Virus record (IMG/VR): IMGVR_UViG_3300032322_001765 | Location: 1-64,000 of that record | DNA: 64,000 bases | Strand: one strand, 5' to 3' | In this document: one piece after another, positions 6,849 to 60,647 of the stretch | Layout: each line of letters begins with the position of its first letter | Position numbering within the stretch: the first letter of the stretch is position 1 | Translations under genes and position numbers: made by a program | Notes under the pieces: model-generated | What the model saw: only the letters and a program-made list of their open reading frames with translations | What the model was told of the DNA's origin: nothing | Databases searched by the model: none

Positions 6849-7278
6849 TTTTTAAAAACTGTAGTGCTTTTGACAACACTTCTTGTTGTTTGCTGTACGC
6901 ATCATATTCCCATGGCAAATTGATGTACTCGTCATATGGCATAGATTCTGATAAGTTTTTAGTAATTAAAACCCCATGCCAATAAAACTCACCTTTTCTA
7001 GTTATTTTCAAAACTTTGGTAAATTTTTGATGGACATGAATTAGTTCGTGGACAAGAATCAATGGCACTGACTCAATAGGTAAATCATGATTTATGCCAA
7101 TTCGATTCATATGAATCATATCAATGCCACCGTATACAGACTTGCCTAAATCGTATATACAAACTTCTATAATAGGCGGCAGTTCAATGATATTTGATAC
7201 TGCAAGTGCTATTTTATCAACGATATTTTCATATCGCCAATTGTAGTTATTATTTTGATAAAAATATTTTACGTTCAC
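6838..7278 (-). CDS. Zincin-like metallopeptidase
   Basis: HELIH (HExxH) and downstream PWEYDA. GTGA overlap with the upstream gene. Confidence 0.7.
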   Translation of the reverse strand: MNVKYFYQNNNYNWRYENIVDKIALAVSNIIELPPIIEVCIYDLGKSVYGGIDMIHMNRIGINHDLPIESVPLILVHELIHVHQKFTKVLKITRKGEFYWHGVLITKNLSESMPYDEYINLPWEYDAYSKQQEVLSKALQFLKIDK

Positions 7279-8084
7279 ACGTGTTGAATAGTTGAAAAAC
7301 TTTTATCTAATATTTTTTGTCTTTCTTGTTTTGTTCTTGCGCCCAAAACAATAATGTTGTACAACTGGTTATTTGAAACAACTAACATAGTAATACAAAA
7401 TCCTGCTGCTCTCGTAAAACCAGTCTTAATTGTTATTACACCATTTTGACCAAAATAGTTACTTGTTGCTTTACTAGTCAACACGAAATTTTTTGGTTCA
7501 CGATTTTGTTTTCTTTTCTTTTTCACCTTTTTAATTTTTTTGGTAATGACGCCTTCGGGTGTAGTTATAACCTTTTGTGATTGTGCAGCACTTTTTACAA
7601 TGTCAAAAGTACTCACCGCATTTGTAAGTAAAATTAAATCGTTTACAGAACTATGATTCATTGGGCTTAGACCAGTTGGTTCTACAAATCCTGAATTATG
7701 CATCCCAAGGGTTCGTGCATAATCATTCATTTTGTTTATGAAAGAGGGTTGACCACCAGGGTAATGTTGAGACAAAGTAATTGCTGCTACATTGTCACTA
7801 CTAATAAGAGCCATGTTAACTAACTCTTTTCTAGTTAGAATCATACCTTTCTGTAATTTAGTATTAGGTGTTCTACTTGAGGTTACCTTTAATTTTTCAG
7901 TAAGGTCTTGTTTTTCTTTTAATACAGTATACACAGTTAACAACTTGCTAATGCTAGCAATACTAACCTGTTCTGAATTAAGTGATCCTTGAATGACTTC
8001 ACCGTTACTAACATTGTAAACAACACTAGTAGGTGCGGCAAAGCAAAAGCAAGGAACTAATAAAAGTAAAAATAATTTTCGCAT
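7275..8084 (-). CDS. D-alanyl-D-alanine carboxy/endopeptidase (peptidase S11, PBP5/PBP7-like), secreted
   Basis: SISK (SxxK), SDN (SxN) and KTG motifs are all intact. The signal peptide MRKLFLLLLVPCFCFA implies a start at 8084. Confidence 0.85.
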   Translation of the reverse strand: MRKLFLLLLVPCFCFAAPTSVVYNVSNGEVIQGSLNSEQVSIASISKLLTVYTVLKEKQDLTEKLKVTSSRTPNTKLQKGMILTRKELVNMALISSDNVAAITLSQHYPGGQPSFINKMNDYARTLGMHNSGFVEPTGLSPMNHSSVNDLILLTNAVSTFDIVKSAAQSQKVITTPEGVITKKIKKVKKKRKQNREPKNFVLTSKATSNYFGQNGVITIKTGFTRAAGFCITMLVVSNNQLYNIIVLGARTKQERQKILDKSFSTIQHV

Positions 8085-8164
8085 ATAATATTTATTATAC
8101 ATTACAACAGTAGAAATATGAAGCTATAAAGGTAAGGTAAAAGGTGATAAGTAGCCACTCTTTT

Positions 8165-8172
8165 TATAAATA
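8165..8172 (+). promoter_or_regulatory. T4-type late promoter box
   Basis: TATAAATA, 5 nt before ATG 8178. Confidence 0.7.
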
Positions 8173-8177
8173 TCGAG

Positions 8178-9305
8178 ATGACACTGGAAGAACTGGATGC
8201 TACAGCCAAACAAGCTTACTACAGTATGGATTTACCCACTGCTTTGCGCTGCTATGCTGAAGCATTTGTAAGATATCCTAAGTTGGCACTTGCCTACAAC
8301 AACTATGGAAATATTTTAAGAGAAACGGGTTATCCTGAAGAAGCATATGGGTTTTTGGAGACAGCCATGAAGCTTGACCCAACTGATAGAAATTTCCCAT
8401 TTAATTATGCTGTTGCTCATTTAGCAGCAGGAGATTTAGAAAAAGGGTGGGAACTTTTTGAGGCTCGATGGAGATTTAAACATCACGAACACACTTTAGA
8501 AGGATGGACTAAACCTAGATGGAATGGAGAATCGATAGCAGGCAAACGGTTACTTATCACCTGTGAAGAAGGTGACGGTGACAATATTCAATTTATAAGA
8601 TTTGTTGATCAACTAAGTGAACTTGATATTGAACCAATCATACAAACAGAAGTGCAATTAGAAAAATTATTTAAAAATAGTTTTCCTAAATTTACAGTAA
8701 TTAATAATACTCAAGAATTTGATGACTTTGATTATTGGACTCCTATTTTAAGTATTCCCAAATGTCTAAACATAACGTATGCTAATTTACCAAAAAGTAA
8801 AAAATATTTACAAGCATCAAACAAAAGTTTACAAAAATGGAAAAAAGTTATAGGCAAAAAAACTAAACCAATTATTGGATTATGTTGGAGCGGCACAAGC
8901 AAACGTTATCCGTTAGCTGAACTAATTAAATTATTGCCGGCTACAAAAGAATATGATTATGTTAATTTACAAATAAAATACACGGATGAAGAAAAAAGTA
9001 TTTTAGAAATTAATAATGTAAAGTGTTTTAAAGAAAATGTTAAGGATTGGGAAGATACGGCTGCATTAATTGATTACTGTGATATGGTTATAAGCATAGA
9101 CACAGGAATAGTACACTTAGCAGGATCGTTAAACAAACAAACAGTTTTGTTGTTAGACAAATACAAATCGTGTTGGCGTTGGTTATATGATAGTGAAAAG
9201 ACTTTATGGTATGATAGTTTAACCTTAATTAGACAAAGAGAACAGAATAATTATGATGAACAACTTTTTAGAGTATGGGAAACTATTAAACGTAACGGTC
9301 TGTAA
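8178..9305 (+). CDS. TPR-repeat glycosyltransferase (GT9/heptosyltransferase-like C-terminus)
   Basis: N-terminal TPRs (AYNNYGNIL, FNYAVAHL), W-x-G-E-x-x-x-GK...EEGDGDNIQF, and ISIDTGIVHLAG...CWRW. Confidence 0.8.
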   Translation: MTLEELDATAKQAYYSMDLPTALRCYAEAFVRYPKLALAYNNYGNILRETGYPEEAYGFLETAMKLDPTDRNFPFNYAVAHLAAGDLEKGWELFEARWRFKHHEHTLEGWTKPRWNGESIAGKRLLITCEEGDGDNIQFIRFVDQLSELDIEPIIQTEVQLEKLFKNSFPKFTVINNTQEFDDFDYWTPILSIPKCLNITYANLPKSKKYLQASNKSLQKWKKVIGKKTKPIIGLCWSGTSKRYPLAELIKLLPATKEYDYVNLQIKYTDEEKSILEINNVKCFKENVKDWEDTAALIDYCDMVISIDTGIVHLAGSLNKQTVLLLDKYKSCWRWLYDSEKTLWYDSLTLIRQREQNNYDEQLFRVWETIKRNGL

Positions 9306-9720: not shown

Positions 9721-12102
9721 TTATGACTGTAAATTATTGGTATTAGTGTAATGATTATAGAGCCATTCCCAATCGTAACTTAATTTTAATTTATCAAATT
9801 CACCATTAACTGTTTCATAGTAATCTACCGCATCTTTTGCACCTTTTAAAGACCACTGACTAAATTGCCCATCAGCTACACTTAACCAAACATCTAATCT
9901 ATATCTACTTTGTTCATCAATTACATTTAAAGAATTATATTTTAACTTGATGACTTCTCTAAACGCAGTTCGCCAAGTATCCCATTCGCTAGTATTATAA
10001 ATACCTATTCCAGAATTTATATTGACTAAAGTATGAGGGCTATCTAATGTAAAATCTAGTCCTTTGCCAGTAGTTGATAGGGTAAGATTTTTGTTATTTA
10101 AAACAACAGCCATATGTCCATATTCTAACCCATTTAAAATATTTGTGGCAGTGAAGATATAATGTTTTGAAGTATGAGTTCGTTTTGGTTGATAACTAAA
10201 ATCAAAATTAGGACTGACCTTACACTTGCTGTTTATTAAAAAGTACCAAGGAGTTAAAGCAGCGTTTGCTGCTGCATGTTGACTCGCAACTCTTCCTTTA
10301 ACGTTACTAACTTTTATTACTCTATTCGGCAAATGTTTAGTTACTTCTAATAAATGTTCGTAGCGGTCATTTTCACCTTGTTCTCCGTTACTTAAAAATA
10401 TAATATCTAATGGTTCATGACGATACCCTAAATTATGATATTTGACATATGGATAATCTTCTAATTTATCGTACATCTTTACTTTTGCATTCTTAGGAAT
10501 CAAAGCTGCAACATCATCTACAATATGAACGTGTGGTATTGAGTCATCTGAAATTATATTAGAGAAATTAAGATTAATATTGCCTATATAGGTATATGTG
10601 GTTTCTTCTTTGTATTCATTTATTCTATCAAAAATACTATCAATATACTCTACTTCGTTTATTTTTAAATCACATTTAATCTCATTTATAAATTTATTAC
10701 TTTGTGCATTTTTTGATTTATAAATTACTGTTGGCATATTTTCGCTAGAATGATACTGGTTACCAAACACGTAATTATATTTTTCTTCTGTATCATCTGG
10801 ATGCCAACTAAAATCAAAACTATCAATGTTAATTGGTTCAACAACTCTAAAATTACGTATATTTGGTAATTTGATTACTCGTTGATCCGAACAATATTTT
10901 TTTATAGCTACACTAGATTCAACATATATAGGACCGCCGGTTTTTTGCCATTGAGTTCCAAATTCATAATTCATCAACGGATCATGTGGATTAGGCACCC
11001 AGCCGTAATCGAACATTCTGTCATCAATATCATTAGGTATTTTCCAGTTTTCTTTATTTGGTAATAAAACTGCTTTTATATCTTTGATATATTTTTTATC
11101 AGTCGCATCTTTAACTCTATATTGGTAGGTTGGCATAGTTTCACCATCATACCATTGATTACCAAAAACATAGATGTAGGGAGGGTCGTGCGGGTTCGGC
11201 ACCCAACTTTGATCTATTACTGCATTATTAACTAATGGGCGCCAGCATCTACTATCAACATCAGGTAACAAAGTTGCTAACAAATCATGTACATATTTCT
11301 TTTCAATAGCTCCTTTTACCTTATACTGATAAGTAGGCATTGTTTTACTATCATACCATTGATTACCAAAAACATAAATGTACGGCGGCTCCGTTTCGTC
11401 TGGGTGCCATGAAAAATCAATTGTGCTGTTGCTAACTAAAGGTCTCCAACATCTATCATTACTGTCAGGTAATTTTTTTACTTTTTGAAAGTCAACATAC
11501 TTAACACCATGTGCATTTTCATTTATGTACGTAGGTCCTCCTGTCTTCTGCCATTGAGTTCCGAACTGCCAATTTAAGGGAGGTTCGTATGGATTAGGGC
11601 ACCAACTATAATCAAAGTTACTATCATCAATATTATCAGGAATTTGCCACTTATCTTTGTTTGATAATAAAGTAGCTTTTACATTGTATACATATTTCTT
11701 ATCTGTTGCACCTTTAACTCTATATTGGTATGTGGGCATTGTTTCACTATCATGCCATTGATTACCAAATACATAGATAAAGGGAGGGTCAGTATCGTCA
11801 GGATGCCAACTGTAATCAATAGTTGCATTGGCAATGAGAGGTCTCCAACATCGATTATTAGAATCAGGCAATCTTATTGCGTGTTGAAGATTTTGATATT
11901 TTATTCCTTCATGCTGCGGCACGATGAATTTAGGTCCGCCTGTCTTCTGCCACTGAGTTCCAAATTGATGTATGTAGGGTCTTTCGTAGATATAAGGGCG
12001 CCAATTAAAATCAAAGTTACTTGTATCTAATCCTTCTGGTATCTCCCAATAACCTTGTTCATTTAATTTTTTTCTGCGTTCTAGTTCTTCTTCACTATAC
12101 AT
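9721..12102 (-). CDS. Tandem-repeat protein with C-terminal GT-A-like domain
   Basis: Seven ~66-aa W/P-rich repeats (FD[FY]SWxP...FG[NT]QW), then a domain paralogous to 19771-20718. Confidence 0.75.
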   Translation of the reverse strand: MYSEEELERRKKLNEQGYWEIPEGLDTSNFDFNWRPYIYERPYIHQFGTQWQKTGGPKFIVPQHEGIKYQNLQHAIRLPDSNNRCWRPLIANATIDYSWHPDDTDPPFIYVFGNQWHDSETMPTYQYRVKGATDKKYVYNVKATLLSNKDKWQIPDNIDDSNFDYSWCPNPYEPPLNWQFGTQWQKTGGPTYINENAHGVKYVDFQKVKKLPDSNDRCWRPLVSNSTIDFSWHPDETEPPYIYVFGNQWYDSKTMPTYQYKVKGAIEKKYVHDLLATLLPDVDSRCWRPLVNNAVIDQSWVPNPHDPPYIYVFGNQWYDGETMPTYQYRVKDATDKKYIKDIKAVLLPNKENWKIPNDIDDRMFDYGWVPNPHDPLMNYEFGTQWQKTGGPIYVESSVAIKKYCSDQRVIKLPNIRNFRVVEPINIDSFDFSWHPDDTEEKYNYVFGNQYHSSENMPTVIYKSKNAQSNKFINEIKCDLKINEVEYIDSIFDRINEYKEETTYTYIGNINLNFSNIISDDSIPHVHIVDDVAALIPKNAKVKMYDKLEDYPYVKYHNLGYRHEPLDIIFLSNGEQGENDRYEHLLEVTKHLPNRVIKVSNVKGRVASQHAAANAALTPWYFLINSKCKVSPNFDFSYQPKRTHTSKHYIFTATNILNGLEYGHMAVVLNNKNLTLSTTGKGLDFTLDSPHTLVNINSGIGIYNTSEWDTWRTAFREVIKLKYNSLNVIDEQSRYRLDVWLSVADGQFSQWSLKGAKDAVDYYETVNGEFDKLKLSYDWEWLYNHYTNTNNLQS

Positions 12103-13586
12103 TAGCTACACACTTTTACACCATACAACGTTTCAAATCTATCTGCGTCACTTCTATCATTGACCATAGGTTCGCCTCGTATGTTTAATGATGTATTTAA
12201 GAGCATAGGACAACCAGTCATAATATACCATTTTTCTAGCAATTCTCTGATTCCCGAACCATCTTTTTTAACTGTCTGTACTCGACTGGTGCCGTCAACA
12301 TGGCATATAGCAGGAAAAGAATCAGGAAACTTACAATTAGCGATTGATTGCATATAAGGGCTATGATCCCACCCATTACAGAAATCAAAATACTGGTCAG
12401 CCATTTCATAAAGTATGACAGGGGCGAAGGGTCTAAATTGTTGTCTACGCTTAATTTCATTCACTTTGCCTTTTATATCAATTTGTCTAGGATCAGCCAG
12501 TAAACTTCTATTGCCCAATGCTCTAGGACCAAACTCTGCTTTTCCTGATGCAACACCAACTATTTTATTTTTAAGTAATTCATCTAATATATTATTAACA
12601 GGATACTTACCTTTTATATCATATCCTAAATATGCAGTGTTCCAATTAATAGCCATCCCATATGCAAGCGCAGCAGCACCTAAACTACTACCTGCATCAC
12701 CTGGATTAGGCATTATCCAAATATTATCAAAGTAATGTCCTAAATTTCTATTTGCTAAACAATTTAAGGCAACGCCGCCCATATAAACTAAATTACTACT
12801 AAAATTAAAATCCTTTGCTCTACGCATCACATTATAGATTAAATTTTCTGCTAAGTCTTGCGCACCTCTTGCAATTATAAATTCATCCATTGTGTCAAAC
12901 TCTTTATCATTTAATCCTAAATGTAAATTTTCTTTAAACTGAATTTCCCACTCATCGTTAATAAAATAATCTTTAAGTTGGTTTTTAAAAAGTTCACTAC
13001 TTACGCCATACGCACTCATACCCATTAAAATATATTCTTCTTCCATAGGTTCTAATCCGGCTTTTTGTGTCATTGCACTATAAAATAAACCTATACTATT
13101 TGGATAACCTTGACGCCATAACAACTTATATTTTGCAGCTCCCATATGGTTATACTCAGCAGCCCATATACTTATAGTGTCAAACTCTCCGATAGCGTCT
13201 ATTACAACTACAGTAGCTCTTTGAAAGGGGCTAGTTTGAAATCCGGCTGCGGCGTGACTTAAATGATGGTTATACGAAACAATTTTTTGATTAGATTTAA
13301 GTAATGGTTTAATTTGATCATTTAATACTTGTTTAGTTGTCAATTTATTAATTTGTAAACCTTCACCAGAATACAAACGTCTTAATTGTTTTTTAAAAGG
13401 ATTCTCATAATAAGCAATCGTGCTGATATTATAGTTTTGTACTTCTTGAATTAAATTTTCACAAATATTTTTATCATTTTTTATTTTACTATAACGCTCA
13501 CTATGCCCAGCAAAAACTATGCCACCTGTATTATTAATGACTGTTAATGCTGCATCATGAAAACCTGCACTAATACCAAGTATCAT
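12102..13586 (-). CDS. O-carbamoyltransferase, NodU/CmcH/TobZ family
   Basis: HDAA...ERYSK, HHLSH, GGVALNC, GDAG, EFGPRALGNRSLLADP, FRPFAP, HVDGTSRVQTV and LNTSLN are all present. Confidence 0.95.
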   Translation of the reverse strand: MILGISAGFHDAALTVINNTGGIVFAGHSERYSKIKNDKNICENLIQEVQNYNISTIAYYENPFKKQLRRLYSGEGLQINKLTTKQVLNDQIKPLLKSNQKIVSYNHHLSHAAAGFQTSPFQRATVVVIDAIGEFDTISIWAAEYNHMGAAKYKLLWRQGYPNSIGLFYSAMTQKAGLEPMEEEYILMGMSAYGVSSELFKNQLKDYFINDEWEIQFKENLHLGLNDKEFDTMDEFIIARGAQDLAENLIYNVMRRAKDFNFSSNLVYMGGVALNCLANRNLGHYFDNIWIMPNPGDAGSSLGAAALAYGMAINWNTAYLGYDIKGKYPVNNILDELLKNKIVGVASGKAEFGPRALGNRSLLADPRQIDIKGKVNEIKRRQQFRPFAPVILYEMADQYFDFCNGWDHSPYMQSIANCKFPDSFPAICHVDGTSRVQTVKKDGSGIRELLEKWYIMTGCPMLLNTSLNIRGEPMVNDRSDADRFETLYGVKVCS

Positions 13587-13687
13587 TTGTATATGAAGGG
13601 ATCTCTTTTTCGTAATTCTTTGAGTTTTTTTCGATATTTATATTCACGAATTACAAAATAGTACAATTCAATAATTTTTTTAATCAT
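13583..13687 (-). CDS. 34-aa basic peptide preceding the carbamoyltransferase (not in ORF track)
   Basis: MIKKIIELYYFVIREYKYRKKLKELRKRDPFIYK. ATGA overlap with 13586 and start overlapping the upstream stop. Confidence 0.75.
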   Translation of the reverse strand: MIKKIIELYYFVIREYKYRKKLKELRKRDPFIYK

Positions 13688-14540
13688 TTTTTATCCAATT
13701 AATCACCGTCTCCGCTACTTGCTTATTAAAATAAATACCCGGATGCGATCCATTGCCTTTTTTATCTTTTTGATTAAGTATATTTAGATCAATATCTCTA
13801 GCAGAATATTTGTTTATAAAATCCATGTCAAAAACTTTGGTTTTTACTATTGGTATTTGAAACTGTTCTAACGGTATATGTGTAATTTTTTTATGGTCTT
13901 TTAAAAATTGATCTAAATTACTTTGGTAAGTCGTAAATTCAAAAATTTTAATATTTAAAGACTTGCAAAGCAAGGAAATTGTCTTTCTATAAAAAGCAAA
14001 CCTATTATTAATATGTGAATTTTCTAGAAGAAAGCAGGTATATGCAGGTTTCCAAAATGGCGCCATAGGATTATTAACCAAATAAAACTCTAGTTTATCA
14101 TTAGTCCAGTAACAATTTCTTGTTAATTCAGGCCAATTTATAATAATTGCTTTAGGCCTACATTCATCATTTGATAGCATTTCTATAATATTTAAAAAAC
14201 TAAAATCAACTGATGCCCCACCTATTGCCCCGTTTACATAATCTAATCTCAAAGCTTTGCTAGTAATATAAGAAAATGTTTCTTCTAATGGTAATCCTGT
14301 GCCAGTTGTAAAACTGCAACCAAAAAATGCTATATAATTAGATAAATTTACTTCATCTAATTCTTTTTCCATTCTATATCCATAAGAATTAAACTTGTAT
14401 AGAATTTTACGATTAGACCATATCCATTTATCACCAAATTTTTCTTTATTTTTTACAAATTTTTCTTCCGGATCACCGGGATAAAATTCAGCAGATAAAT
14501 TTAATTCATTTTCATACGGAGATTTCAGTAAATAAGTCAT
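13680..14540 (-). CDS. SGNH/GDSL-like hydrolase or acyltransferase
   Basis: FFGCSFTTG (block I-like), GGASVD, RD...SHPG (block V-like). Likely start is ATG 14540. Confidence 0.6.
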   Translation of the reverse strand: MTYLLKSPYENELNLSAEFYPGDPEEKFVKNKEKFGDKWIWSNRKILYKFNSYGYRMEKELDEVNLSNYIAFFGCSFTTGTGLPLEETFSYITSKALRLDYVNGAIGGASVDFSFLNIIEMLSNDECRPKAIIINWPELTRNCYWTNDKLEFYLVNNPMAPFWKPAYTCFLLENSHINNRFAFYRKTISLLCKSLNIKIFEFTTYQSNLDQFLKDHKKITHIPLEQFQIPIVKTKVFDMDFINKYSARDIDLNILNQKDKKGNGSHPGIYFNKQVAETVINWIKND

Positions 14541-15684
14541 GTAATATTTTATAAAATTCAGAAAAAGTATTTTGATAGGTTTCGTTTCTTGATTCATCTA
14601 ACCATTTATTATATTTAATTCCTTGTTTAAACATTTCAACATTTTCATCTTTAGACACATGACTCAATAAATGCTGATAATTTTTAAGTTTATCAGTTAA
14701 TTTGTATTTTAGGGTTTCGGGTAAAATTCTTACGCTATAAAATTTTGGGTCATAAACAATATTTGATTGAACCTTAATATTTAAATTATTAAAATATTCC
14801 ATAAACTCAGGAACATAATAAATGTTCATCCAACTTATAGTCTGTGTTACACTTGTGTTTATCCAACTATTTTCTTTAAGTTTTTGTAAATTATATTCTA
14901 CATCATCCCATTTAGTTCCTTTTCTGATATAGTCGTTACGCTTACCTAAATCGTCAATACTACAATGTACTTCTACTTCTTTAAAGTTTTTCCAAATGTC
15001 TAATAATTGATTTGGTAGGTTAGACATATTAATACTATACCATAATTTTATTTGTTTGTTTAATCCATGTTCGATAAGTCTTTCTAAATAATTCCAATGT
15101 TTCTCTACTAAAGTAGGTTCACCCCCGTTTATATAAATTAACTCAACATCTTGACTGTGTGATAACAAGTCATTCCAAAATTCATCTGATTGTGTCCAAT
15201 TTGAATTAATCTTATTATCGTAAATTGTAACAAAATTTAATTCAGATTGAAGTTTATTGTACTCACTTATCCATTGAGTACTTGATGCCGGATTACATGT
15301 TCTACATTTTGCATTGCATAAGTTCCCTAACCTTAATTCAATAAACTTAAAATTAGGTTTTATAATTCCGTTTATATCATCATAGTCAGTGCCATATCGA
15401 GAAAGTTCTAATTTTCTTTTACTTTGTAAATTTAAATCTTCTTCTTGGTAACATCTTAAACATGCTTGTGGTTTTATTCCATTGCGCATTTCGTTACGTG
15501 TCTGTACAAAAAAATCGCTATTAACTATTTCTATAACCTTATTTTGATTTAAATTTAATTTTTTTCCGTTGGTTCTAGCAAAACTCATACTGTTAGTATG
15601 ATCACTAATGCAACATAATGAACTAGTTCCTTCAGGATGTGTTGCTAAATGCATCCATGGCAATGGACAAAAAGTGTCGGTCAT
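14512..15684 (-). CDS. Radical SAM protein with N-terminal Twitch-type domain
   Basis: CNAKCRTC (CxxxCxxC), INGGEP, and N-terminal C..W...LCC...CLRC. Confidence 0.9.
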   Translation of the reverse strand: MTDTFCPLPWMHLATHPEGTSSLCCISDHTNSMSFARTNGKKLNLNQNKVIEIVNSDFFVQTRNEMRNGIKPQACLRCYQEEDLNLQSKRKLELSRYGTDYDDINGIIKPNFKFIELRLGNLCNAKCRTCNPASSTQWISEYNKLQSELNFVTIYDNKINSNWTQSDEFWNDLLSHSQDVELIYINGGEPTLVEKHWNYLERLIEHGLNKQIKLWYSINMSNLPNQLLDIWKNFKEVEVHCSIDDLGKRNDYIRKGTKWDDVEYNLQKLKENSWINTSVTQTISWMNIYYVPEFMEYFNNLNIKVQSNIVYDPKFYSVRILPETLKYKLTDKLKNYQHLLSHVSKDENVEMFKQGIKYNKWLDESRNETYQNTFSEFYKILHDLFTEISV

Positions 15685-16988
15685 ATATTTTTATACCAAA
15701 TTAAAATATCTTTGTTTCTTGATAATATTGAAAGTAACATATCATTTTCGTTTCTGTGTAAGTCGATTTTGTTAAACCTACGCTTTCCAGCTTTTAAACC
15801 ATTTACATGGTCGCTATACTTTTCGTCAAATGTTTGCCGATACTTCATATCATTAAATGTTTCACTATAAACCTTTGTTAAATGGTTACCTTTTATATTT
15901 TCGTATTCTATAAGGTCATCTAACATCGGGTCTAAAATTCTATGGGGCACACACATGGGACTCATTAATACACTTGATTCAAAATCGAAAGTTATTTTTA
16001 CATAAGATTTTACATTAAGTTGAACCGCTAAATCAATCATGTTTTTCATATCTAGCATTCCAGGGAGGGTCAATGTCACATCTAACACCATTGCATCCAT
16101 ACCATATATGTCATTTAAAAATAATCCCTTTTTAAAATTAGTTAACCATTCATTATATTTTAGACCAGATCGAATATACTCCGCAACTTCACCCGTAGCA
16201 TCCATACTAGCACATATATTAACTTTTTTGAAATTAGGAAGTAAATCATATAGGTTTTGATTTTTGTATGATACACGACTTAGATTAGTATTATATCTAA
16301 CAACAACGTTTTTACTATGTCCTGATTCAACCAAATATTTCATAACTTCCCAATGTATATCATACATTAGTGGCTCTCCACCGACCCAATAAATTTCTTC
16401 AATAGTATTATTTTTTACAGCTTCCCATAGTTCACTTTCAACGACTGTAGTTTGAAAATTTTCAATTTGATTTTTATTTTCATGTACCATCCATCTGTCG
16501 ACCGACGGGTTCCACATGTTTAAAATTCTTTTTTCACTTTCCCAAGAACTTGACAATTGCTCCCCACACATTCTGCATTTAAAATTACAAAGGTTATGTA
16601 TTCTATAATCAAACGAAATTGGTTTCATTGTGGTATGACCAGTTTCATCTGTTGAACTTAATATTTCATCAATTTTATGTGGGAATAAATTTTCGGTAAA
16701 ATACTGTCGATAGGTATATAAATTCAATATATTATTATTACAGACTTGACATTCAGGAATGTTTTCTCCATTAAGTATTCTACGACGAACACTACGCATA
16801 TGTTCGCTATTCCAATGTTCTTCCAGTGTCGTTGGTTTATACTCGTTACTATCAGAACCTTCGCTATCAATATATTGTTTTTGCCAACTAGCCTGTTCAC
16901 GACTAGCACAGCATAATCTACGTTCGCTTTGTGGGCTTATGTAAGTATGTGTCCATGGTGCAACACAAAATGTCTTTTTATCAATCAT
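15681..16988 (-). CDS. Radical SAM protein with N-terminal Twitch-type domain
   Basis: CNFKCRMC, VGGEP, and N-terminal CVAPW...LCC...CQVC. Confidence 0.9.
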   Translation of the reverse strand: MIDKKTFCVAPWTHTYISPQSERRLCCASREQASWQKQYIDSEGSDSNEYKPTTLEEHWNSEHMRSVRRRILNGENIPECQVCNNNILNLYTYRQYFTENLFPHKIDEILSSTDETGHTTMKPISFDYRIHNLCNFKCRMCGEQLSSSWESEKRILNMWNPSVDRWMVHENKNQIENFQTTVVESELWEAVKNNTIEEIYWVGGEPLMYDIHWEVMKYLVESGHSKNVVVRYNTNLSRVSYKNQNLYDLLPNFKKVNICASMDATGEVAEYIRSGLKYNEWLTNFKKGLFLNDIYGMDAMVLDVTLTLPGMLDMKNMIDLAVQLNVKSYVKITFDFESSVLMSPMCVPHRILDPMLDDLIEYENIKGNHLTKVYSETFNDMKYRQTFDEKYSDHVNGLKAGKRRFNKIDLHRNENDMLLSILSRNKDILIWYKNI

Positions 16989-18408
16989 ATGTTGCTAATG
17001 GCTCATCTATATTTGTACCATCACCGCTATTCAATGGTTGGTAGGGTAATACTGTGGTTTCAATTGATTCTATCCAATCTGTTAAAATTTTAGGAAACAC
17101 ACTTAACGATTTGTTTCTACGTTGGTCGTATTCGGCGTAGAATGTTTTAAAATCTTTCCATAATAACTCTTTATTACTTGTCCTACGATGTGGGGCGTCA
17201 ACAACTTCTAAATAGTCTATCAAACGCTCTATGCTAGCTTTTTCACTCTCATGCCACAGTGGTTTGTTTTTTGCATTTTCATACCAATTACTTAAATTAT
17301 TTCTAACGTAATCTTTAATGTGATCAGGTAATGCTAATGGACTTTGAAAGCTCGGAAAACGCAATAGATTTAAGCTAACCGTGGGGCTCTTACAGTTTGG
17401 ATCTTCTTTAAGTTCATATATCTCGTCCAAGAAGTGATGAATACTGAATAAACATAAACTGTTTATTGTCATCATAACGTGAAGGCCTTCGAGATTTGCC
17501 TCAGATGCAATACGTTTAAAATTTTTCTTCCATAGTTTATATTCTAATCCATCACGAATATATTCAGCATGTTTACCCGTAGCTTCGCATGAAGTATACA
17601 AATGAAACCTTTTTATATTTTTTGTTTTTAAAATTAATTTGTCAATGATATCCTCTTTTGCAATTAAATTACTATTAACCGCAAAGCGCATATTACTATC
17701 CTGTTTCTCGAACCAATCGAACAACTTCCAAGTATTACCGGACATGAGTGGTTCGCCACCTGTAATACGTAGTTCTTCTAAACTTTCATTAAGACCATTA
17801 TCCCACCATTCCCAAAATGCTTGCACATAAGGATTTTCACTATCATCTTTGTAAGGCTGTGCCCATGATCCGTCTTGTTGAAAGGCGCCGGCGCCATCGC
17901 TAACTAAGTTTTGATAAGGTCCTTTTTTCTTTATGTCATTCGCCCAAGTTGTACTAAAACTTGCATTGCAATAACTACAAGCCAAATTACACACTCTATC
18001 AAAACTAATTTCAAAGGTTTTCAATAATACATCATGATCCCAAGGAGTCTGATTTGTTTTTGATATATCTTCATCACTATAGATAATTGTTTTAAATGTT
18101 CTATCAGAAACTTGGTCACCACCTATATCTTCAATTTTCCAACAATATTCACACTCTCTAGGTCTTTCACCTTCGAGCATCATTTTACGCATTAATTTTT
18201 TATGGTTAGTATTGTGTATAGCCGAAACATTTACTTTAACTTCTTCTATAGGAATTCTGTGAGCCGGCGGGTGATGACAGCTTGCAGTTGTACCAGACCC
18301 CAACCAAGTAGTTGCATTGTACCATTTTGCTGCACAATAACTTGGACTAATTTTATTGATTACTCTATTTCTATAGTCTGTCAAACTCTCATCAGGTTTT
18401 TTAGGCAT
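16981..18408 (-). CDS. Radical SAM protein with N-terminal Twitch-type domain (SCHH subtype)
   Basis: CNLACSYC, TGGEP, and N-terminal CAAKW...SCHHP...CEYCW. Confidence 0.9.
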   Translation of the reverse strand: MPKKPDESLTDYRNRVINKISPSYCAAKWYNATTWLGSGTTASCHHPPAHRIPIEEVKVNVSAIHNTNHKKLMRKMMLEGERPRECEYCWKIEDIGGDQVSDRTFKTIIYSDEDISKTNQTPWDHDVLLKTFEISFDRVCNLACSYCNASFSTTWANDIKKKGPYQNLVSDGAGAFQQDGSWAQPYKDDSENPYVQAFWEWWDNGLNESLEELRITGGEPLMSGNTWKLFDWFEKQDSNMRFAVNSNLIAKEDIIDKLILKTKNIKRFHLYTSCEATGKHAEYIRDGLEYKLWKKNFKRIASEANLEGLHVMMTINSLCLFSIHHFLDEIYELKEDPNCKSPTVSLNLLRFPSFQSPLALPDHIKDYVRNNLSNWYENAKNKPLWHESEKASIERLIDYLEVVDAPHRRTSNKELLWKDFKTFYAEYDQRRNKSLSVFPKILTDWIESIETTVLPYQPLNSGDGTNIDEPLATYD

Positions 18409-19771
18409 TTAATTCTTTCCAAAAGTTTTCATATTGGGGAAACGTACTTATAAAGTCTGTACCTCTCCGTAAATCGTATTCATTTATAAACTTCACAAAA
18501 TCTTCTTGTAAATCTATTCTTGTTTCATTGTTTGTAAGGTAATCGCAAAATCTTTTGATTTGATCCCATTCCTCAAGATACAGTCTTGCGTGTTCAGCTT
18601 TGATATAGTATTTTAGTAATAATTCTGACTTTGCTAAAATATCTTTGGCAAAATGCTCTCTTACATCTTTCGGAAGAATAAGGACATTTAAATGGGGAGG
18701 CCAACGTAGATAATTTATACTTACAGGAACTCTATTATTTGCACTCGTTAAATTAAATTCTTTTCGTAATTCAATAACCAAATCTAAAAAATCAGTAGTA
18801 GTTGGTAAACTTAGCACATTCATTGTGGTCATAATACTCACTGTAGAATCTGTATTACTTAAAATTTTTCTAACGTTATCTATCCATTTGTTGTAATTTA
18901 ATCCATATCTGCTGTATTCTGCTTGTTCACCTATCGATTCCAAACTTGTATAAATATCCACTCGTTTAACAGAATTGGATAGTTTATTAATTGTTTCTAT
19001 AAAATTATCTATCAATTTATCGTCTACACATAAATTAGAATTAATTGCTAATTCTAAGTTTGGTTTGGGATTATCGATAAGGTACGATAAAGTTTTTTGT
19101 ACATCTTTACTTAACAGCGGTTCACCACCTGTAATTCTAAACACTCGTAAATCGTCAATAATAGTAGGAAAATATTTATGGAAAGTATTTACATATGGAT
19201 TATCGTCACTATGCTTGTAAGGAAAACGTCCTACTTGTTTTAACCAATCTAGATTATGATTACTATTAAATGTAGGATAGGGCCCATGTCTTTCAATTTC
19301 TTCCATCCACTTGCTCGACACCTCAGGACTGCAATAACTACATTTAAAATTACACACATTACTGAATGAAACTTCTAAATAAGCAGGATTTATATCAGCA
19401 TATGGATCGCTACGTGCGACTTCATCTATTCTGTCCCACGCCCAATAATCTGCTGTTTTATAATGTCTATCACTAAAGTAAGATTTATCCAAATCTTCTA
19501 CGTTCCAACAATAGTCGCATTCTTGAGGTCGTTCGCCTTTTAACATTTTAACACGTTGTTCTTTTTTATAAGAACTGTTATGCAAGCTTGCTGGATTTTG
19601 TAATTCGCTTAATTGAATTTTATGTGGGCTGGGATGATGACAACTATGGTTATAACCATTTTGTAAATTTAAAGTTGTTTGCAACCACTTGGCACTACAA
19701 AAACTAGAACTAATATTGTTAATTTTTATAACTTTTTGTTTTAATTCCTCAATTCTCTGTTCGTTGCTCAT
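18401..19771 (-). CDS. Radical SAM protein with N-terminal Twitch-type domain (SCHH subtype)
   Basis: CNFKCSYC, TGGEP, and N-terminal CSAKW...SCHHP...CDYCW. The TAATG overlap supports a start at 19771. Confidence 0.9.
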   Translation of the reverse strand: MSNEQRIEELKQKVIKINNISSSFCSAKWLQTTLNLQNGYNHSCHHPSPHKIQLSELQNPASLHNSSYKKEQRVKMLKGERPQECDYCWNVEDLDKSYFSDRHYKTADYWAWDRIDEVARSDPYADINPAYLEVSFSNVCNFKCSYCSPEVSSKWMEEIERHGPYPTFNSNHNLDWLKQVGRFPYKHSDDNPYVNTFHKYFPTIIDDLRVFRITGGEPLLSKDVQKTLSYLIDNPKPNLELAINSNLCVDDKLIDNFIETINKLSNSVKRVDIYTSLESIGEQAEYSRYGLNYNKWIDNVRKILSNTDSTVSIMTTMNVLSLPTTTDFLDLVIELRKEFNLTSANNRVPVSINYLRWPPHLNVLILPKDVREHFAKDILAKSELLLKYYIKAEHARLYLEEWDQIKRFCDYLTNNETRIDLQEDFVKFINEYDLRRGTDFISTFPQYENFWKELNA

Positions 19772-59348: not shown

Positions 59349-59851
59349 ATACTTTATACCTTGATATGGACGGGGTTGTTGCAGATTTTGATGCTTATGC
59401 TTATAATACATTAGGTTTAGGTCCTTCAGAAGGTATATATCCAAATAGTGAATGGGAAAAGTTACGCAGCAATCCTAGACTCTACAGAGATTTAGAAAAA
59501 ACACCTTACGCAGATGAATTAGTGTTTCAATGTAGTGTTTTTGCAAAACGTAATAATTTTAATTTAAAGTTTTTAACAGCAGTACCAAAAGATAATGATT
59601 TACCTTGGGCTTTCTATGACAAGTTTAAATGGGTAGAAAAGAACGGTTTTAGTAATATTCCTATCATGTTTGGCCCTTATAGTAAAGACAAACATATGCA
59701 TTGTAAAACTGGTGATATCTTAATTGATGATAGAACTAGTAACATTGAAGAATGGATAGCAGCAGGTGGATATGGTATATTACATAGAACAAGTTATGAA
59801 CATACATTAGAGGAGTTATTCAATTATGAAAATATTATTAACAGGTCATAA
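59345..59851 (+). CDS. 5'(3')-deoxyribonucleotidase, HAD superfamily
   Basis: LDMDGVVADF and ILIDD...NI.EW...GG. Confidence 0.85.
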   Translation: MNTLYLDMDGVVADFDAYAYNTLGLGPSEGIYPNSEWEKLRSNPRLYRDLEKTPYADELVFQCSVFAKRNNFNLKFLTAVPKDNDLPWAFYDKFKWVEKNGFSNIPIMFGPYSKDKHMHCKTGDILIDDRTSNIEEWIAAGGYGILHRTSYEHTLEELFNYENIINRS

Positions 59852-60647
59852 AGGTTTCATTGGTCAAAATATGCTTAAGTATCTCCAATCTAATACAGAT
59901 TGGTCTATTGATACATATGACATTAAAGATGAATTCCAAGGGGTCATGTCTTATGACTGGGTAATTCATTTAGGTGCAGTAACAAGTACAACCGAAAAAA
60001 ACTTAGATAAAGTTTTAACTCAAAATTATGAGTTTTCTAAAAATCTGTTTGACGAATGCAAAACGTTTGGGGTGAATTTACAATATGCTAGTTCTGCTAG
60101 TGTATATGGACAAAATTTAGAATTTACAGAAGAAAGTCCATTAGATCCAATAACTCCGTACGCATGGTCAAAATATCTTTTCGAGCGACACGCCTCAAAT
60201 AATATGGGAGGTAATATAGTTCAAGGGTTTAGGTATTTTAACGTTTATGGAAAGCACGAAGATCATAAAGAAGGTCAGTCCAGTCCTATTCATCAGTTTA
60301 CAAAACAAGCTAAAACAAACGGAAAAATAAAGATTTTTGATGATAGTCATAAAATGTTTAGAGATTTTATTTGTGTTGATGATGTTTGTAGAGTACAGAT
60401 TGAGTTTATTAAAAGCGTTAAAGAATCAGGCATTTGGAATTTAGGCACAGGTAGGCCGACTAGTTTTGAGAAAGTTGCCGAATATATCAAAGATATATAT
60501 GGCGGAAAGTTAAAGTATGCTATGATGCCAGATCAGTTACAGAGAAGTTATCAATATTATACATGCAGTGATAATACCAAATTAGAAAATACCATTGGCA
60601 AGCAGAGTTGGATAAAAATTAAAGATTTTTTAAAACAAGACAAGTAA
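59826..60647 (+). CDS. hldD: ADP-L-glycero-D-manno-heptose 6-epimerase-like (extended SDR)
   Basis: TGHKGFIG, HLGA..STTE, YASSASVYG, YAWSK, FRYFNVYG..E.HK and RDFICVDDV. Confidence 0.75.
   Translation: MKILLTGHKGFIGQNMLKYLQSNTDWSIDTYDIKDEFQGVMSYDWVIHLGAVTSTTEKNLDKVLTQNYEFSKNLFDECKTFGVNLQYASSASVYGQNLEFTEESPLDPITPYAWSKYLFERHASNNMGGNIVQGFRYFNVYGKHEDHKEGQSSPIHQFTKQAKTNGKIKIFDDSHKMFRDFICVDDVCRVQIEFIKSVKESGIWNLGTGRPTSFEKVAEYIKDIYGGKLKYAMMPDQLQRSYQYYTCSDNTKLENTIGKQSWIKIKDFLKQDK

What the first reader, a model, noticed from the sequence alone, without database searches (positions are those of the whole stretch)
8178..9305. Late TPR-GT9 glycosyltransferase that may pair with the phage HldD
GT9-type enzymes use ADP-heptose, and the same genome encodes an HldD-like epimerase (59826-60647). 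The TPRs suggest a protein substrate, by analogy to Aah/TibC protein heptosyltransferases. The candidate function is heptosylation of virion proteins or host LPS.
Basis: inference. Interest (0 to 1): 0.6.

Follow-up and report, generated by a model that had tools for sequence, protein, structure and literature searches.

The report
Phage TPR-heptosyltransferase-like protein glycosyltransferase
A freshwater jumbo phage encodes a small enzyme that joins a peptide-binding TPR module to a heptosyltransferase-type (GT9) sugar-transferring domain; it probably glycosylates a protein, and it is not tied to the phage's HldD-like epimerase.

Summary

At least 525 IMG/VR viral contigs encode relatives. 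In most, the gene sits alone on the opposite strand beside the gp23-like capsid gene. The window's clade has moved next to a Peptidase_S11 gene. A TAAATA box lies about 5 nt before the ATG in 44 of 46 distinct upstream regions, which fits a late, leaderless transcript.

The 59826..60647 epimerase is HldD-like. The genome also encodes RfaE-like kinase and adenylyltransferase genes, so a phage-made ADP-heptose-like donor is plausible.

The proposed pairing fails the co-occurrence test. Two complete relatives carry the TPR-GT gene but only GalE, and 125 cultured-phage records, mostly cyanophages, carry the epimerase while none has a close TPR-GT relative. Donor and acceptor remain inferred.

The parts
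8165..8172 (+). TATAAATA box (T4-late-promoter-like), 5 nt upstream of the ATG, with no Shine-Dalgarno between. Probable promoter of a leaderless monocistronic mRNA.
   Evidence: Read directly from the sequence. A TAAATA core starts at -14..-9 in 44 of 46 distinct upstream regions of homologues, against 35 of 530 other ORFs in the same loci. In G000 the same box lies at -23..-27, followed by an SD, before structural genes. Promoter function is inferred, not shown.
8178..9305 (+). TPR-GT9-like glycosyltransferase gene (375 aa + stop)
8178..8477 (+). N-terminal domain of three TPRs (residues 1-100). N42 (8301-8303) and N76 (8403-8405) are invariant and align with the Asn of OGT's 'SNLGN' and 'INLA' TPR positions.
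   Evidence: Helices 3-15, 19-32, 37-49, 57-66, 72-83 and 87-100 in the model. Alignment to human OGT TPRs. Invariant columns in 23- and 78-sequence alignments. That these positions form OGT's peptide-binding ladder is from my knowledge of Jinek et al. 2004 and later OGT work, not tested here.
8526..9302 (+). Compact GT-B catalytic domain of GT9 / heptosyltransferase type (residues ~117-375)
8577..8582 (+). G134-D135 within the invariant ExGxGDxxQFxR motif. Aligns with WaaC G12-D13, the catalytic base.
   Evidence: Invariant in A1 and A3. The structural alignment starts model residue 123 at WaaC residue 1. A gap-free local alignment pairs RLLITCEEGDGD with RVLIVKTSSMGD. The role of D13 is from the literature on WaaC, recalled.
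8901..8903 (+). K242 in 'SKRYP'. Aligns with the Lys of the GT9 'KRWP' motif (phosphate-binding Lys; K192 in WaaC).
   Evidence: Conserved in at least 90% of sequences. Alignments to WaaF.
9099..9119 (+). D308-T-G-I-V-H313-L314, the GT9 donor-sugar motif D(T/S)GxxHL. Aligns with WaaC D261..H266-L267.
   Evidence: D308 and H313 are invariant in both family alignments. T309 and L314 are invariant in A1 and at least 90% conserved in A3. Profile-to-PDB alignment to WaaC 244-276. hhalign probability 92%.
7275..8102 (-). Divergently transcribed neighbour: Peptidase_S11 D-Ala-D-Ala carboxy/endopeptidase with a signal-like N-terminus. It is the conserved neighbour of the TPR-GT gene in the window's clade only.
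   Evidence: Pfam 123.6 bits. The same arrangement is seen in L001-L006 and in an independent 95-kb metagenome contig. A functional link is not shown.
59826..60647 (+). It lies in a tight + strand run gp47-like / gp46-like / NT5C-like / epimerase / PDDEXK nuclease.
   Evidence: TIGR02197 221 bits (cut-off 274.6). It is 34% identical to Salmonella HldD over 256 residues. The YxxxK motif and the 'HK' Lys (HldD K178 position) are conserved, and about 26 residues are deleted after the first Rossmann strand.

Best explanation
The gene encodes a soluble, cytoplasmic protein glycosyltransferase built like a miniature OGT but with a heptosyltransferase-type catalytic domain.

Proposed mechanism:
- Three TPRs with a conserved asparagine ladder hold an extended stretch of an acceptor protein.
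- They present a hydroxyl (Ser/Thr/Tyr) to a compact GT-B domain.
- That domain keeps the GT9 catalytic Asp, the phosphate-binding Lys and the D-T-G-x-x-H sugar-nucleotide motif, so it should work as an inverting transferase using an ADP-heptose-type donor.
- The donor could come from the host. In this phage it could also come from the phage's own RfaE-like kinase, RfaE-like adenylyltransferase and HldD-like epimerase.
- The gene is probably transcribed on its own from a T4-late-like TAAATA box as a leaderless mRNA.
- Its ancestral, lineage-wide position is directly beside the major capsid gene. The most likely acceptors are therefore virion proteins (capsid or fibre proteins) made at the same time.

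Shown here: the gene, the fold, motif conservation, the family's spread in phages, synteny, and the promoter-like box.

Inferred: catalytic activity, the donor, a protein acceptor, a virion target, and late timing.
For: Fold and motifs:
- Searches show GT9 as the best structural class. The residues aligned to WaaC D13, K192, D261 and H266 are invariant or nearly so in 78 sequences.
- All functionally characterised best fold matches (WaaC, WaaF, TibC) use ADP-heptose. TibC transfers it to protein serines. The top hit, 3TOV, is an uncharacterised GT9 structure.

Protein acceptor:
- The TPR domain aligns best with OGT TPRs, E 4e-18.
- N42 and N76 are invariant at the ladder positions.
- The whole-model Foldseek hits with the lowest E-values are TPR+GT-B protein glycosyltransferases SPY and OGT.

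Phage role:
- At least 525 IMG/VR contigs encode relatives.
- ESM Atlas clusters of the family are mostly Uroviricota.
- Of 26 related loci with at least 4 kb of downstream sequence, 23 have the gp23-like capsid gene downstream (median gap 953 nt) and 3 are the S11 type.
- The capsid-adjacent arrangement is also seen on long or complete contigs (L011, L029, L039, L053) and on a 202-kb metagenome contig not filtered for viruses.
- In a quick tree the phage genes form one clade against bacterial modules, and the window's S11-linked clade is nested among capsid-linked ones.

Timing: the TAAATA box is conserved at a fixed distance in 44 of 46 upstream regions, and the same box precedes structural genes in G000.

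Donor supply: G000 has an RfaE domain II-like adenylyltransferase (119 bits; the next best family scores 56), an RfaE domain I-like kinase (146 bits; ribokinase scores 49), a cupin, and the HldD-like epimerase. The same cassette and epimerase are present in relative G004.
Against: - No experiment or expression data exist. No RNA runs hold the gene.
- Sequence similarity to characterised GT9 enzymes is weak. Profile against WaaC gives E 0.026, and NCBIfam heptosyltransferase equivalogs score 18-29 bits against cut-offs of 135-185. Donor specificity therefore cannot be read from homology.
- TPR+GT-B enzymes can use quite different donors. FlmG uses CMP-pseudaminic or CMP-legionaminic acid (PMC7591256; bioRxiv 10.1101/2022.03.25.485807).
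- Complete relatives G002 and G003 have the gene but no HldD-like epimerase and no RfaE-like kinase. No genome examined has GmhA or GmhB.
- The window's own copy is 62 kb from the capsid gene, next to a secreted peptidase. Synteny with structural genes is therefore lost in this very genome.
- The gene is always on the strand opposite to the structural operon, with homing-endonuclease genes nearby in some relatives. That also fits a mobile 'moron'-like accessory gene.
- The co-fold with the capsid protein gave no answer.
Confidence: 0.4

Rival explanations
1. Same architecture and a protein acceptor, but a different donor. The GT9-like domain would transfer another activated sugar (CMP-nonulosonic acid as in FlmG, or a UDP/GDP-hexose), and the phage's HldD/RfaE-like genes would serve other transferases, such as the GT9-like paralog, GT25 and GT2 in the 132-139 kb island.
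For: - FlmG shows that a TPR + GT-B enzyme can use CMP-Pse or CMP-Leg (PMC7591256; 10.1101/2022.03.25.485807).
- The TPR-GT gene occurs in complete genomes without HldD or the RfaE-like kinase. Those genomes carry GalE and NTase-PMI-cupin fusions instead.
- In G000 the RfaE-like cassette lies next to other glycosyltransferases, not next to this gene.
- Similarity to heptosyltransferases is remote.
Against: - The D-T-G-x-x-H-L motif and the KRxP lysine typical of ADP-heptose enzymes are strictly kept.
- All functionally characterised best fold matches are ADP-heptose enzymes.
- No nonulosonic-acid synthesis genes were noticed, but they were not searched for systematically.
Confidence: 0.25
2. 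The enzyme glycosylates host proteins rather than virion proteins. This would be a takeover or counter-defence function, for example modifying a host surface-appendage subunit, translation factor or defence protein.
For: - The TPR asparagine ladder says only 'peptide', not whose peptide.
- Bacterial relatives are long TPR proteins in many phyla with no conserved neighbourhood. The module is evidently versatile.
- In the window's clade the gene left the structural block.
- The opposite-strand, own-promoter layout is typical of accessory genes.
Against: - The position beside the capsid gene is conserved across the lineage, and a late-type promoter box is present.
- A late-made enzyme has little time to reprogram the host.
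Confidence: 0.18
3. It is an LPS or glycolipid heptosyltransferase that remodels the host envelope, for example to block superinfection. The TPRs would serve oligomerisation or membrane-complex docking.
For: - The Pfam family is the LPS heptosyltransferase family.
- The window copy is paired with a cell-wall enzyme, Peptidase_S11.
- The genome also has a GT25 'LPS biosynthesis' protein.
Against: - It fails all WaaC, WaaF and WaaQ equivalog models by a wide margin.
- The acceptor (N-terminal) lobe is shortened and preceded by a peptide-binding TPR module that is conserved to the residue.
- No LPS heptosyltransferase I know of carries TPRs.
- Late expression in a lytic jumbo phage gives little benefit from LPS remodelling.
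Confidence: 0.08
4. It is not an enzyme. It would be a TPR scaffold or assembly chaperone that retains a degenerate GT-B fold, or a DNA glycosyltransferase like the GT-B enzymes that put heptose on 5hmC.
For: - Phage GT-B enzymes that add heptose to 5hmC are described (bioRxiv 10.1101/2023.12.21.572611).
- The paralog in G000 has lost the Asp of the DTG motif.
Against: - All catalytic and donor-binding positions are invariant or nearly so over sequences as little as 35% identical. This argues for a working active site.
- The best fold matches are GT9 enzymes, not T4 beta-glucosyltransferase.
- G000's thymidylate-synthase-family gene scores like a normal ThyA, 350 bits over the full profile, so there is no sign of a 5hmC pathway. 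This was not tested further.
Confidence: 0.06

Closest known systems
LPS heptosyltransferases WaaC / WaaF and other GT9 enzymes (PDB 2H1H, 1PSW, 3TOV)
   Different: No TPRs in those enzymes. Their acceptor is Kdo2-lipid A or the inner core at the membrane. The phage domain is about 60-80 residues shorter. NCBIfam equivalog scores are far below their cut-offs. Sequence identity is 14-16%.
Bacterial autotransporter heptosyltransferases TibC / Aah (BAHT family, PDB 4RAP/4RB4)
   Different: TibC recognises its substrate without TPRs and forms an iron-containing dodecamer. It is encoded beside its autotransporter substrate. None of these features was seen or tested here. Identity is 10-12%.
GT41 O-GlcNAc / O-fucose transferases (OGT, SPINDLY, bacterial OGT homologues)
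   Same: N-terminal TPR superhelix with an asparagine ladder fused to a GT-B catalytic domain. The TPRs of the phage protein align best with OGT TPRs. These are the lowest-E Foldseek hits for the whole model.
   Different: The catalytic domain is not GT41: there is no PF13844 hit and whole-chain TM is about 0.3. The phage protein has 3 TPRs instead of 11-13. GT41 donors are UDP-GlcNAc or GDP-fucose.
FlmG flagellin glycosyltransferase of Caulobacter / Brevundimonas
   Same: Two-part logic shown by experiment. The TPR domain binds the acceptor protein and the C-terminal GT-B domain of about 290 aa sets donor specificity. It is cytoplasmic and uses a soluble donor (PMC7591256).
   Different: FlmG is 596 aa, uses CMP-pseudaminic or CMP-legionaminic acid, and is confined to Caulobacterales flagellar loci. 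Whether its GT-B domain is homologous to this family was not tested, because no sequence was at hand.
Mycobacteriophage virion glycosylation (Freeman et al. 2023, cited in PMC12619734)
   Same: Phage-encoded glycosyltransferases that decorate capsid and tail-tube subunits. Their genes are linked to the structural module.
   Different: Different enzyme families, Gram-positive-type hosts and different glycans. No TPR-GT9 enzyme is involved, to my knowledge.

Membership tests
GT9 / Pfam Glyco_transf_9 (heptosyltransferase superfamily) | Match to the family model above the curated cut-off | tested here: met
   PF01075 scores 33.5 bits against a cut-off of 22, E 3.5e-8, but covers only profile positions 79-207. 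The genome scan gives 34.1 bits.
GT9 / Pfam Glyco_transf_9 (heptosyltransferase superfamily) | GT-B fold closest to solved GT9 structures | tested here: met
GT9 / Pfam Glyco_transf_9 (heptosyltransferase superfamily) | Catalytic Asp in the N-terminal G-D motif (WaaC D13) | tested here: met
   G134-D135 is invariant in 78 sequences. It aligns with WaaC G12-D13. The catalytic role is from the literature and was not assayed.
GT9 / Pfam Glyco_transf_9 (heptosyltransferase superfamily) | Donor motif D(T/S)GxxHL and the phosphate-binding Lys (WaaC D261/H266, K192) | tested here: met
   D308-T-G-I-V-H313-L aligns with WaaC 261-267. D308 and H313 are invariant. K242 in 'KRYP' aligns with the WaaF 'KRWP' Lys.
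GT9 / Pfam Glyco_transf_9 (heptosyltransferase superfamily) | Uses ADP-L-glycero- or ADP-D-glycero-beta-D-manno-heptose as donor | not testable with these tools
   Needs an enzyme assay or a ligand-bound structure.
LPS heptosyltransferase I/II/III (WaaC/WaaF/WaaQ equivalogs) | Score at or above the NCBIfam equivalog cut-off | tested here: not met
   TIGR02193 scores 28.6 against 185.3. TIGR02195 scores 20.5 against 134.6. TIGR02201 scores 18.3 against 170.2.
BAHT protein heptosyltransferases (TibC/Aah) | Fold similarity to TibC | tested here: met
BAHT protein heptosyltransferases (TibC/Aah) | Iron-finger Cys cluster, dodecameric ring, and a gene adjacent to an autotransporter substrate | tested here: inconclusive
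   No autotransporter gene lies next to it in any locus. The iron-finger and the oligomer state were not examined. Identity to TibC is 10-12%.
GT41 (OGT/SPY) | TPR superhelix with an Asn ladder N-terminal to the catalytic domain | tested here: met
   The TPR region aligns to OGT TPRs at E 3.8e-18. N42 and N76 fall on the 'SNLGN' and 'INLA' asparagines and are invariant.
GT41 (OGT/SPY) | GT41-type catalytic domain | tested here: not met
   No Glyco_transf_41 hit in Pfam. Whole-chain TM is about 0.3 with rmsd above 11 A. The catalytic domain aligns better with GT9.
FlmG-class flagellin glycosyltransferases | Sequence homology of the GT-B domain; a flagellin and nonulosonic-acid gene context | not tested
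   No FlmG sequence was available through the tools. No flagellar or Pse/Leg genes were seen near the phage gene, but no targeted search was made.
HldD, ADP-glyceromanno-heptose 6-epimerase (for the proposed partner at 59826..60647) | Equivalog score; catalytic Tyr-x3-Lys plus the second base Lys (K178) | tested here: inconclusive
   TIGR02197 scores 221 bits, below the cut-off of 274.6, but is three times the next family. YAWSK and 'DHK' align with the HldD Y140/K144 and K178 positions. About 26 residues of the NADP-binding region are missing.

The most novel reading that the evidence does not exclude
A whole lineage of freshwater T4-like jumbo phages carries a dedicated 'mini-OGT' protein heptosyltransferase. 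It would put heptose on the Ser/Thr-rich, hypervariable surface loop of the major capsid protein, or on fibre proteins. In some members (G000, G004) the donor would come from a phage-encoded short ADP-heptose pathway (cupin isomerase, RfaE-like kinase, RfaE-like adenylyltransferase, HldD-like epimerase). If so, this would be, to my knowledge, the first virion protein heptosylation system in phages, and a third, independent solution to protein heptosylation and TPR-guided glycosylation alongside TibC/Aah and OGT/FlmG.
Probability: 0.12. Interest if true: 0.8.

Novelty: new variant of a known kind. Interest (0 to 1): 0.52.

Why it matters
Protein glycosylation of phage particles is known from only a few systems, yet it changes immune recognition, stability and host range.

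This gene family is present in hundreds of uncultured freshwater phage contigs, usually directly beside the capsid gene. It combines two well-understood modules in an arrangement that has not been characterised: an OGT-like peptide-holding TPR ladder and a heptosyltransferase-like catalytic domain.

If the enzyme is a protein heptosyltransferase, it gives three things:
- a compact 375-aa tool for site-directed protein glycosylation
- a marker for virion glycosylation in metagenomes
- a reason why some jumbo phages carry their own ADP-heptose-type genes

If it uses another donor, it still defines a phage-specific branch of a widespread, unstudied bacterial TPR-GT9 family.

The negative result on HldD pairing also matters. 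The HldD-like epimerase of T4-like phages should not be assumed to feed this enzyme.

Tried and rejected
1. Co-fold of the TPR-GT protein with the G000 major capsid protein: 'no answer', score 0.00. This is no evidence either way.
2. Megablast of the region against cultured phages: no match. The phage is uncultured. The nearest cultured gp46 is PA5oct-like at 49%.
3. Single-sequence PDB search of the GT domain: only E ~1 to WaaF. A profile was needed, and it still aligned only the donor motif.
4. hhalign of the family against Salmonella WaaC: only 36 columns aligned. A full residue-by-residue donor-pocket comparison was therefore not possible, and model coordinates are not exposed to scripts.
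5. Pfam on the conserved neighbours of the capsid-linked type (the ~195-aa and ~260-aa proteins and the variable ORFs): no families except HNH in one variable ORF. Local HMMs of both proteins found no homologue in G000, so they cannot be the universal acceptor.
6. Bacterial neighbourhoods of 80 cellular relatives: no conserved context, so no functional hint.
7. Epimerase co-occurrence on five more TPR-GT contigs: all are 13-29% complete fragments and so uninformative.
8. Single-protein scan of IMG/VR with the epimerase: found only a 100% identical copy on another contig.
9. Sequencing-run search: lake and freshwater DNA runs only, with no RNA holders. Read laying was therefore not used and expression timing could not be checked.
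10. GmhA and GmhB searches: none found. G000 is estimated at only 61% complete, so absence there is not conclusive.
11. 'Moraphage' paper (PMC12619734): checked as a possible description of this lineage. Nothing ties it to these T4-like phages.
12. Whether FlmG's GT-B domain belongs to this family could not be tested.

The large representative-protein search was not used, because the word search and the viral and genome scans already gave ample relatives.
Full report
**What is at the coordinates**

Window 8178..9305(+) is an uninterrupted 375-aa ORF. It is the only + strand gene in a long run of - strand genes. Pfam finds Glyco_transf_9 (PF01075) above its curated cut-off (33.5 against 22 bits, E 3.5e-8). 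The match covers residues 203-324 and only the donor-binding half of the profile. Eight TPR models hit residues ~10-95, the best of them just under its cut-off. NCBIfam's heptosyltransferase I/II/III equivalogs are hit only at 18-29 bits against cut-offs of 135-185. The protein is therefore GT9-like but not an LPS-core heptosyltransferase orthologue. PHROGs gives one family of unknown function.

**Structure**

An AlphaFold2 model on a 78-sequence alignment (A3) is very confident, with pLDDT 95.1 and pTM 0.92. It shows six helices forming three TPRs (residues 3-100), a short linker, and then a two-lobed Rossmann GT-B domain.

Foldseek's lowest E-values go to TPR+GT-B protein glycosyltransferases (SPINDLY, OGT), but with a poor overall TM of ~0.3. 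The highest TM values go to GT9 3TOV, WaaF 1PSW and TibC 4RAP, at 0.47-0.48.

**Active-site features**

In alignments of 23 and 78 family members, down to 35% identity, the following stand out:
- Invariant columns include E130, G132, G134, D135, F139 and R141.
- Further on, D302, D308 and H313 are also invariant.
- K242 is at least 90% conserved.

A profile of the GT domain alone finds WaaC as the best PDB sequence (E 0.026). It aligns D308-T-G-x-x-H313-L with WaaC D261-T-G-L-S-H266-L, and hhalign against Salmonella WaaC gives 92% probability.

The structural alignment starts model residue 123 at WaaC residue 1. This puts G134-D135 on WaaC G12-D13. K242 in 'SKRYP' aligns with the Lys of WaaF's 'KRWP'. 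From my knowledge of the WaaC literature, these are the catalytic base, the phosphate-binding lysine and the heptose/phosphate-binding motif. Their strict conservation argues for a working, GT9-type, inverting active site.

**TPR features**

The TPR region aligns best with human OGT TPRs at E 3.8e-18. N42 and N76 fall on the asparagines of OGT's 'SNLGN' and 'INLA' positions and are invariant in the family. In OGT these asparagines form the ladder that holds the backbone of substrate peptides (recalled from the OGT structural literature). I take this as the main argument that the acceptor is a protein.

**Family and genomic context**

The word-index protein search found 182 relatives, nearly all 370-400 aa and mostly unnamed or called 'TPR repeat protein'. 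Cultured phages hold only six distant (23-26%) relatives. A pattern scan of IMG/VR found at least 525 viral contigs encoding relatives. ESM Atlas clusters of the family are mostly Uroviricota and carry the automatic name 'tetratricopeptide repeat-containing glycosyltransferase family protein'.

I called ORFs in 80 fetched loci and compared them with the whole 220,867-bp genome of the window (G000). Two arrangements appear.

- **Common, capsid-linked type** (36-42% identity to the window protein). The gene sits alone on the opposite strand inside the late structural block. The order is: fibre-like proteins, a ~195-aa protein, a ~260-aa protein, the TPR-GT gene, 0-3 variable ORFs, the gp23-like major capsid protein, scaffold, prohead protease and portal. 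The capsid proteins are ~85% identical to G000's.
- **S11-linked type** (six loci, 51-64% identity, as in the window). The gene is divergent from a Peptidase_S11 gene.

Of 26 loci with at least 4 kb of downstream sequence, 23 have the capsid gene downstream (median gap 953 nt) and 3 are the S11 type.

IMG/VR's viral calling could bias short contigs towards hallmark genes. The capsid-linked layout nevertheless holds on long or complete contigs (251, 337, 349 and 98 kb) and on a 202-kb contig from an unfiltered metagenome. The S11 layout is confirmed on an independent 95-kb contig.

A quick maximum-likelihood tree places all phage sequences in one clade against ten bacterial modules. The careful search did not finish, and long branches are present. 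The S11-linked sequences form one clade (SH-aLRT 100) nested among capsid-linked ones. The capsid-adjacent site is therefore probably ancestral, and the window's copy is a relocated, fast-evolving derivative.

Bacterial relatives (at most 32% identity) exist in many phyla. There the module is always the C-terminal end of longer TPR proteins (412-2273 aa), without a conserved neighbourhood. The phage form is the minimal version.

**Is it 'late'?**

A perfect TATAAATA lies at 8165-8172, 5 nt before the ATG, with no Shine-Dalgarno. A TAAATA core at the same distance occurs in 44 of 46 distinct upstream regions of homologues, against 35 of 530 other ORFs in the same loci. In G000 the box occurs at -11 before 11 genes. 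It occurs at -23..-27, followed by an SD, before recognisable structural genes. The capsid gene itself has a strong SD and no box of its own.

I infer a T4-late-type promoter giving a leaderless mRNA. No RNA data exist for this phage, so this is an inference.

**The proposed partner**

Window 59826..60647 encodes a 273-aa epimerase. Its best family is HldD (TIGR02197, 221 bits; GalE scores 74), although this is below the equivalog cut-off. It is 34% identical to Salmonella HldD. It keeps the YxxxK motif and the lysine at the K178 position, but lacks ~26 residues of the NADP-binding region. It lies in a tight operon with gp47-like, gp46-like, NT5C-like and PDDEXK genes. Some cyanomyoviruses likewise have the epimerase next to gp46.

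G000 also encodes a glycosylation island outside the window, at 131.9-139.2 kb:
- a 571-aa GT9-like paralog fused to a methyltransferase-like region (hhalign probability 99.8%, but with the DTG aspartate lost)
- a GT25 protein, a GT2-like protein and two methyltransferases
- an RfaE domain II-like adenylyltransferase (119 bits; the next family scores 56)
- an RfaE domain I-like kinase (146 bits; ribokinase scores 49)
- a cupin
- NrdA/NrdB immediately after the island

GmhA and GmhB were not found, but G000 is estimated at only 61% complete.

**Co-occurrence**

Five large contigs carrying the TPR-GT gene were compared with G000.

| Genome | Size | Completeness | HldD-like epimerase | RfaE-like kinase | RfaE-II-like NTase |
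|---|---|---|---|---|---|
| G000 (window) | 221 kb | 61% | yes | yes | yes, in an NTase-kinase-cupin cassette |
| G004 | 215 kb | 61% | yes (47% identity) | yes | yes, same cassette (55/47/62% identity) |
| G002 | 337 kb | 100%, terminal repeats | no; GalE (above that family's cut-off) | no | NTase-PMI-cupin fusion |
| G003 | 349 kb | 97% | no; GalE (above that family's cut-off) | no | NTase-PMI-cupin fusion |
| G001 | 252 kb | 72% | none | no | NTase-PMI-cupin fusion |
| G005 | 115 kb | 33% | none | no | one RfaE-II-like hit (77 bits), not characterised further |

Conversely, 125 cultured-phage records carry the epimerase, while none has a close TPR-GT relative.

The epimerase, kinase and adenylyltransferase travel together in G000 and G004. 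The TPR-GT gene does not depend on them. This does not exclude ADP-heptose as donor, because Gram-negative hosts make it. It does remove the specific 'pairing' argument. The GT9-like paralog inside the island is the more natural client of the phage's own pathway.

**Verdict**

The most likely reading (confidence about 0.4 for the whole chain) is a late-expressed, cytoplasmic protein glycosyltransferase. Its TPR asparagine ladder would feed a phage protein, most likely a virion protein, into a GT9/TibC-like active site that uses an ADP-heptose-type donor.

The capsid protein's only variable stretch is an S/T/A-rich segment around residues 100-150, in an alignment that is otherwise about 94% identical. 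That makes it a tempting target, but it is speculation. The co-fold test gave no answer.

Rivals are a different donor, host-protein targets, LPS remodelling, and a non-catalytic or DNA-directed role. They are ranked in the report sections.

I rate it a new variant of a known kind. The modules and the logic are known from OGT, FlmG and TibC. To my knowledge the combination and its phage-lineage-wide, capsid-adjacent deployment are uncharacterised.

The phage itself is an uncultured freshwater T4-like jumbo phage. Lake and freshwater DNA runs from 16 studies hold the gene, and the nearest cultured gp46 is PA5oct-like at 49%.

- Read laying was not used, because there were no RNA holders.
- Because the word search sees only 0.55-1.75 times the query length, longer kin were sought separately with the genome scan. 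The GT domain was also searched on its own.
- The large representative search was not needed.
- Only table 11 was used.

Noticed in passing
window 26929-44013 (-): A single 5694-aa ORF in the tail/fibre block, followed by 1116-, 1038- and 815-aa ORFs. One of these has a weak Phage_base_V hit. It is probably a giant fibre or decoration protein.
   Followed up: no
window 12102-19771 (-): A carbamoyltransferase (Carbam_trans_N/C) is followed by an unannotated 305-aa ORF and four tandem radical-SAM/SPASM-like paralogs (390-475 aa). This is an unexplained modification cluster 3-10 kb from the TPR-GT gene. A homologue of one paralog lies between the TPR-GT and capsid genes in L024 and L040.
   Followed up: partly
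window 9721-12102 (-): A 793-aa protein with 4-5 internal repeats (motifs FGTQWQKTGGP and YIYVFGNQW). It has no Pfam, NCBIfam or PHROG family.
   Followed up: no
window 7275-8102 (-): A phage-encoded Peptidase_S11 (D-Ala-D-Ala carboxy/endopeptidase, 123.6 bits) with a signal-like N-terminus. It is the conserved divergent neighbour of the TPR-GT gene in the window's clade, seen in L001-L006 and in an independent 95-kb contig.
   Followed up: partly
G000 131965-139209 (outside the window; L093:3965-11209): A glycosylation island. It holds a GT9-like paralog fused to a methyltransferase-like region (Asp of the DTG motif lost), a GT25 protein, a GT2-like protein, two methyltransferases, an RfaE domain II-like adenylyltransferase, an RfaE domain I-like kinase and a cupin. 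NrdA/NrdB follow directly. The NTase-kinase-cupin cassette is conserved in relative G004.
   Followed up: yes
G000 128230-131904 (L093:230-3904): A 1224-aa protein with RCC1 repeats (WD40_RLD 378 bits) and Laminin-G/ConA-like domains, just upstream of the island. It is a likely surface or fibre protein and a possible glycosylation target.
   Followed up: no
G000 genome-wide; window 8165-8172, and e.g. G000 67396, 149731-152438, 178631: A TAAATA box lies exactly 5 nt before the ATG, without an SD, at 11 or more genes. The same box lies at -23..-27 with an SD before structural genes. This suggests two classes of late transcripts, one of them leaderless.
   Followed up: partly
L095, L096, L098 (relatives G003, G001, G002): Fusion proteins of ~252 aa join an RfaE domain II-like nucleotidyltransferase to a PMI-type cupin. 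They are present in TPR-GT-bearing jumbo phages that lack the kinase and HldD. The same genomes carry GalE.
   Followed up: partly
L029:11143-11925, L190:11842-12615 and 17100-17690: HNH and NUMOD3 homing-endonuclease genes are inserted between the TPR-GT gene and the capsid gene, and within the head module, in several relatives. This marks a variable hot spot.
   Followed up: no
G000 70355-71557 (L085:6355-7557), residues ~100-150: The gp23-like capsid protein is ~85% identical across the lineage. Its only variable stretch is an S/T/A-rich segment.
   Followed up: partly
L183 (IMGVR_UViG_3300033571_018919, 127 kb): A second IMG/VR contig carries a 100% identical copy of the epimerase. It is probably another assembly of the same or a very close phage.
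   Followed up: no
window 59345-59851 (+): An NT5C-like 5'-deoxynucleotidase gene overlaps the start of the HldD-like epimerase gene by 26 nt, within the gp47/gp46 operon. This is an odd neighbourhood for a sugar-nucleotide epimerase. Some cyanomyoviruses share it.
   Followed up: no
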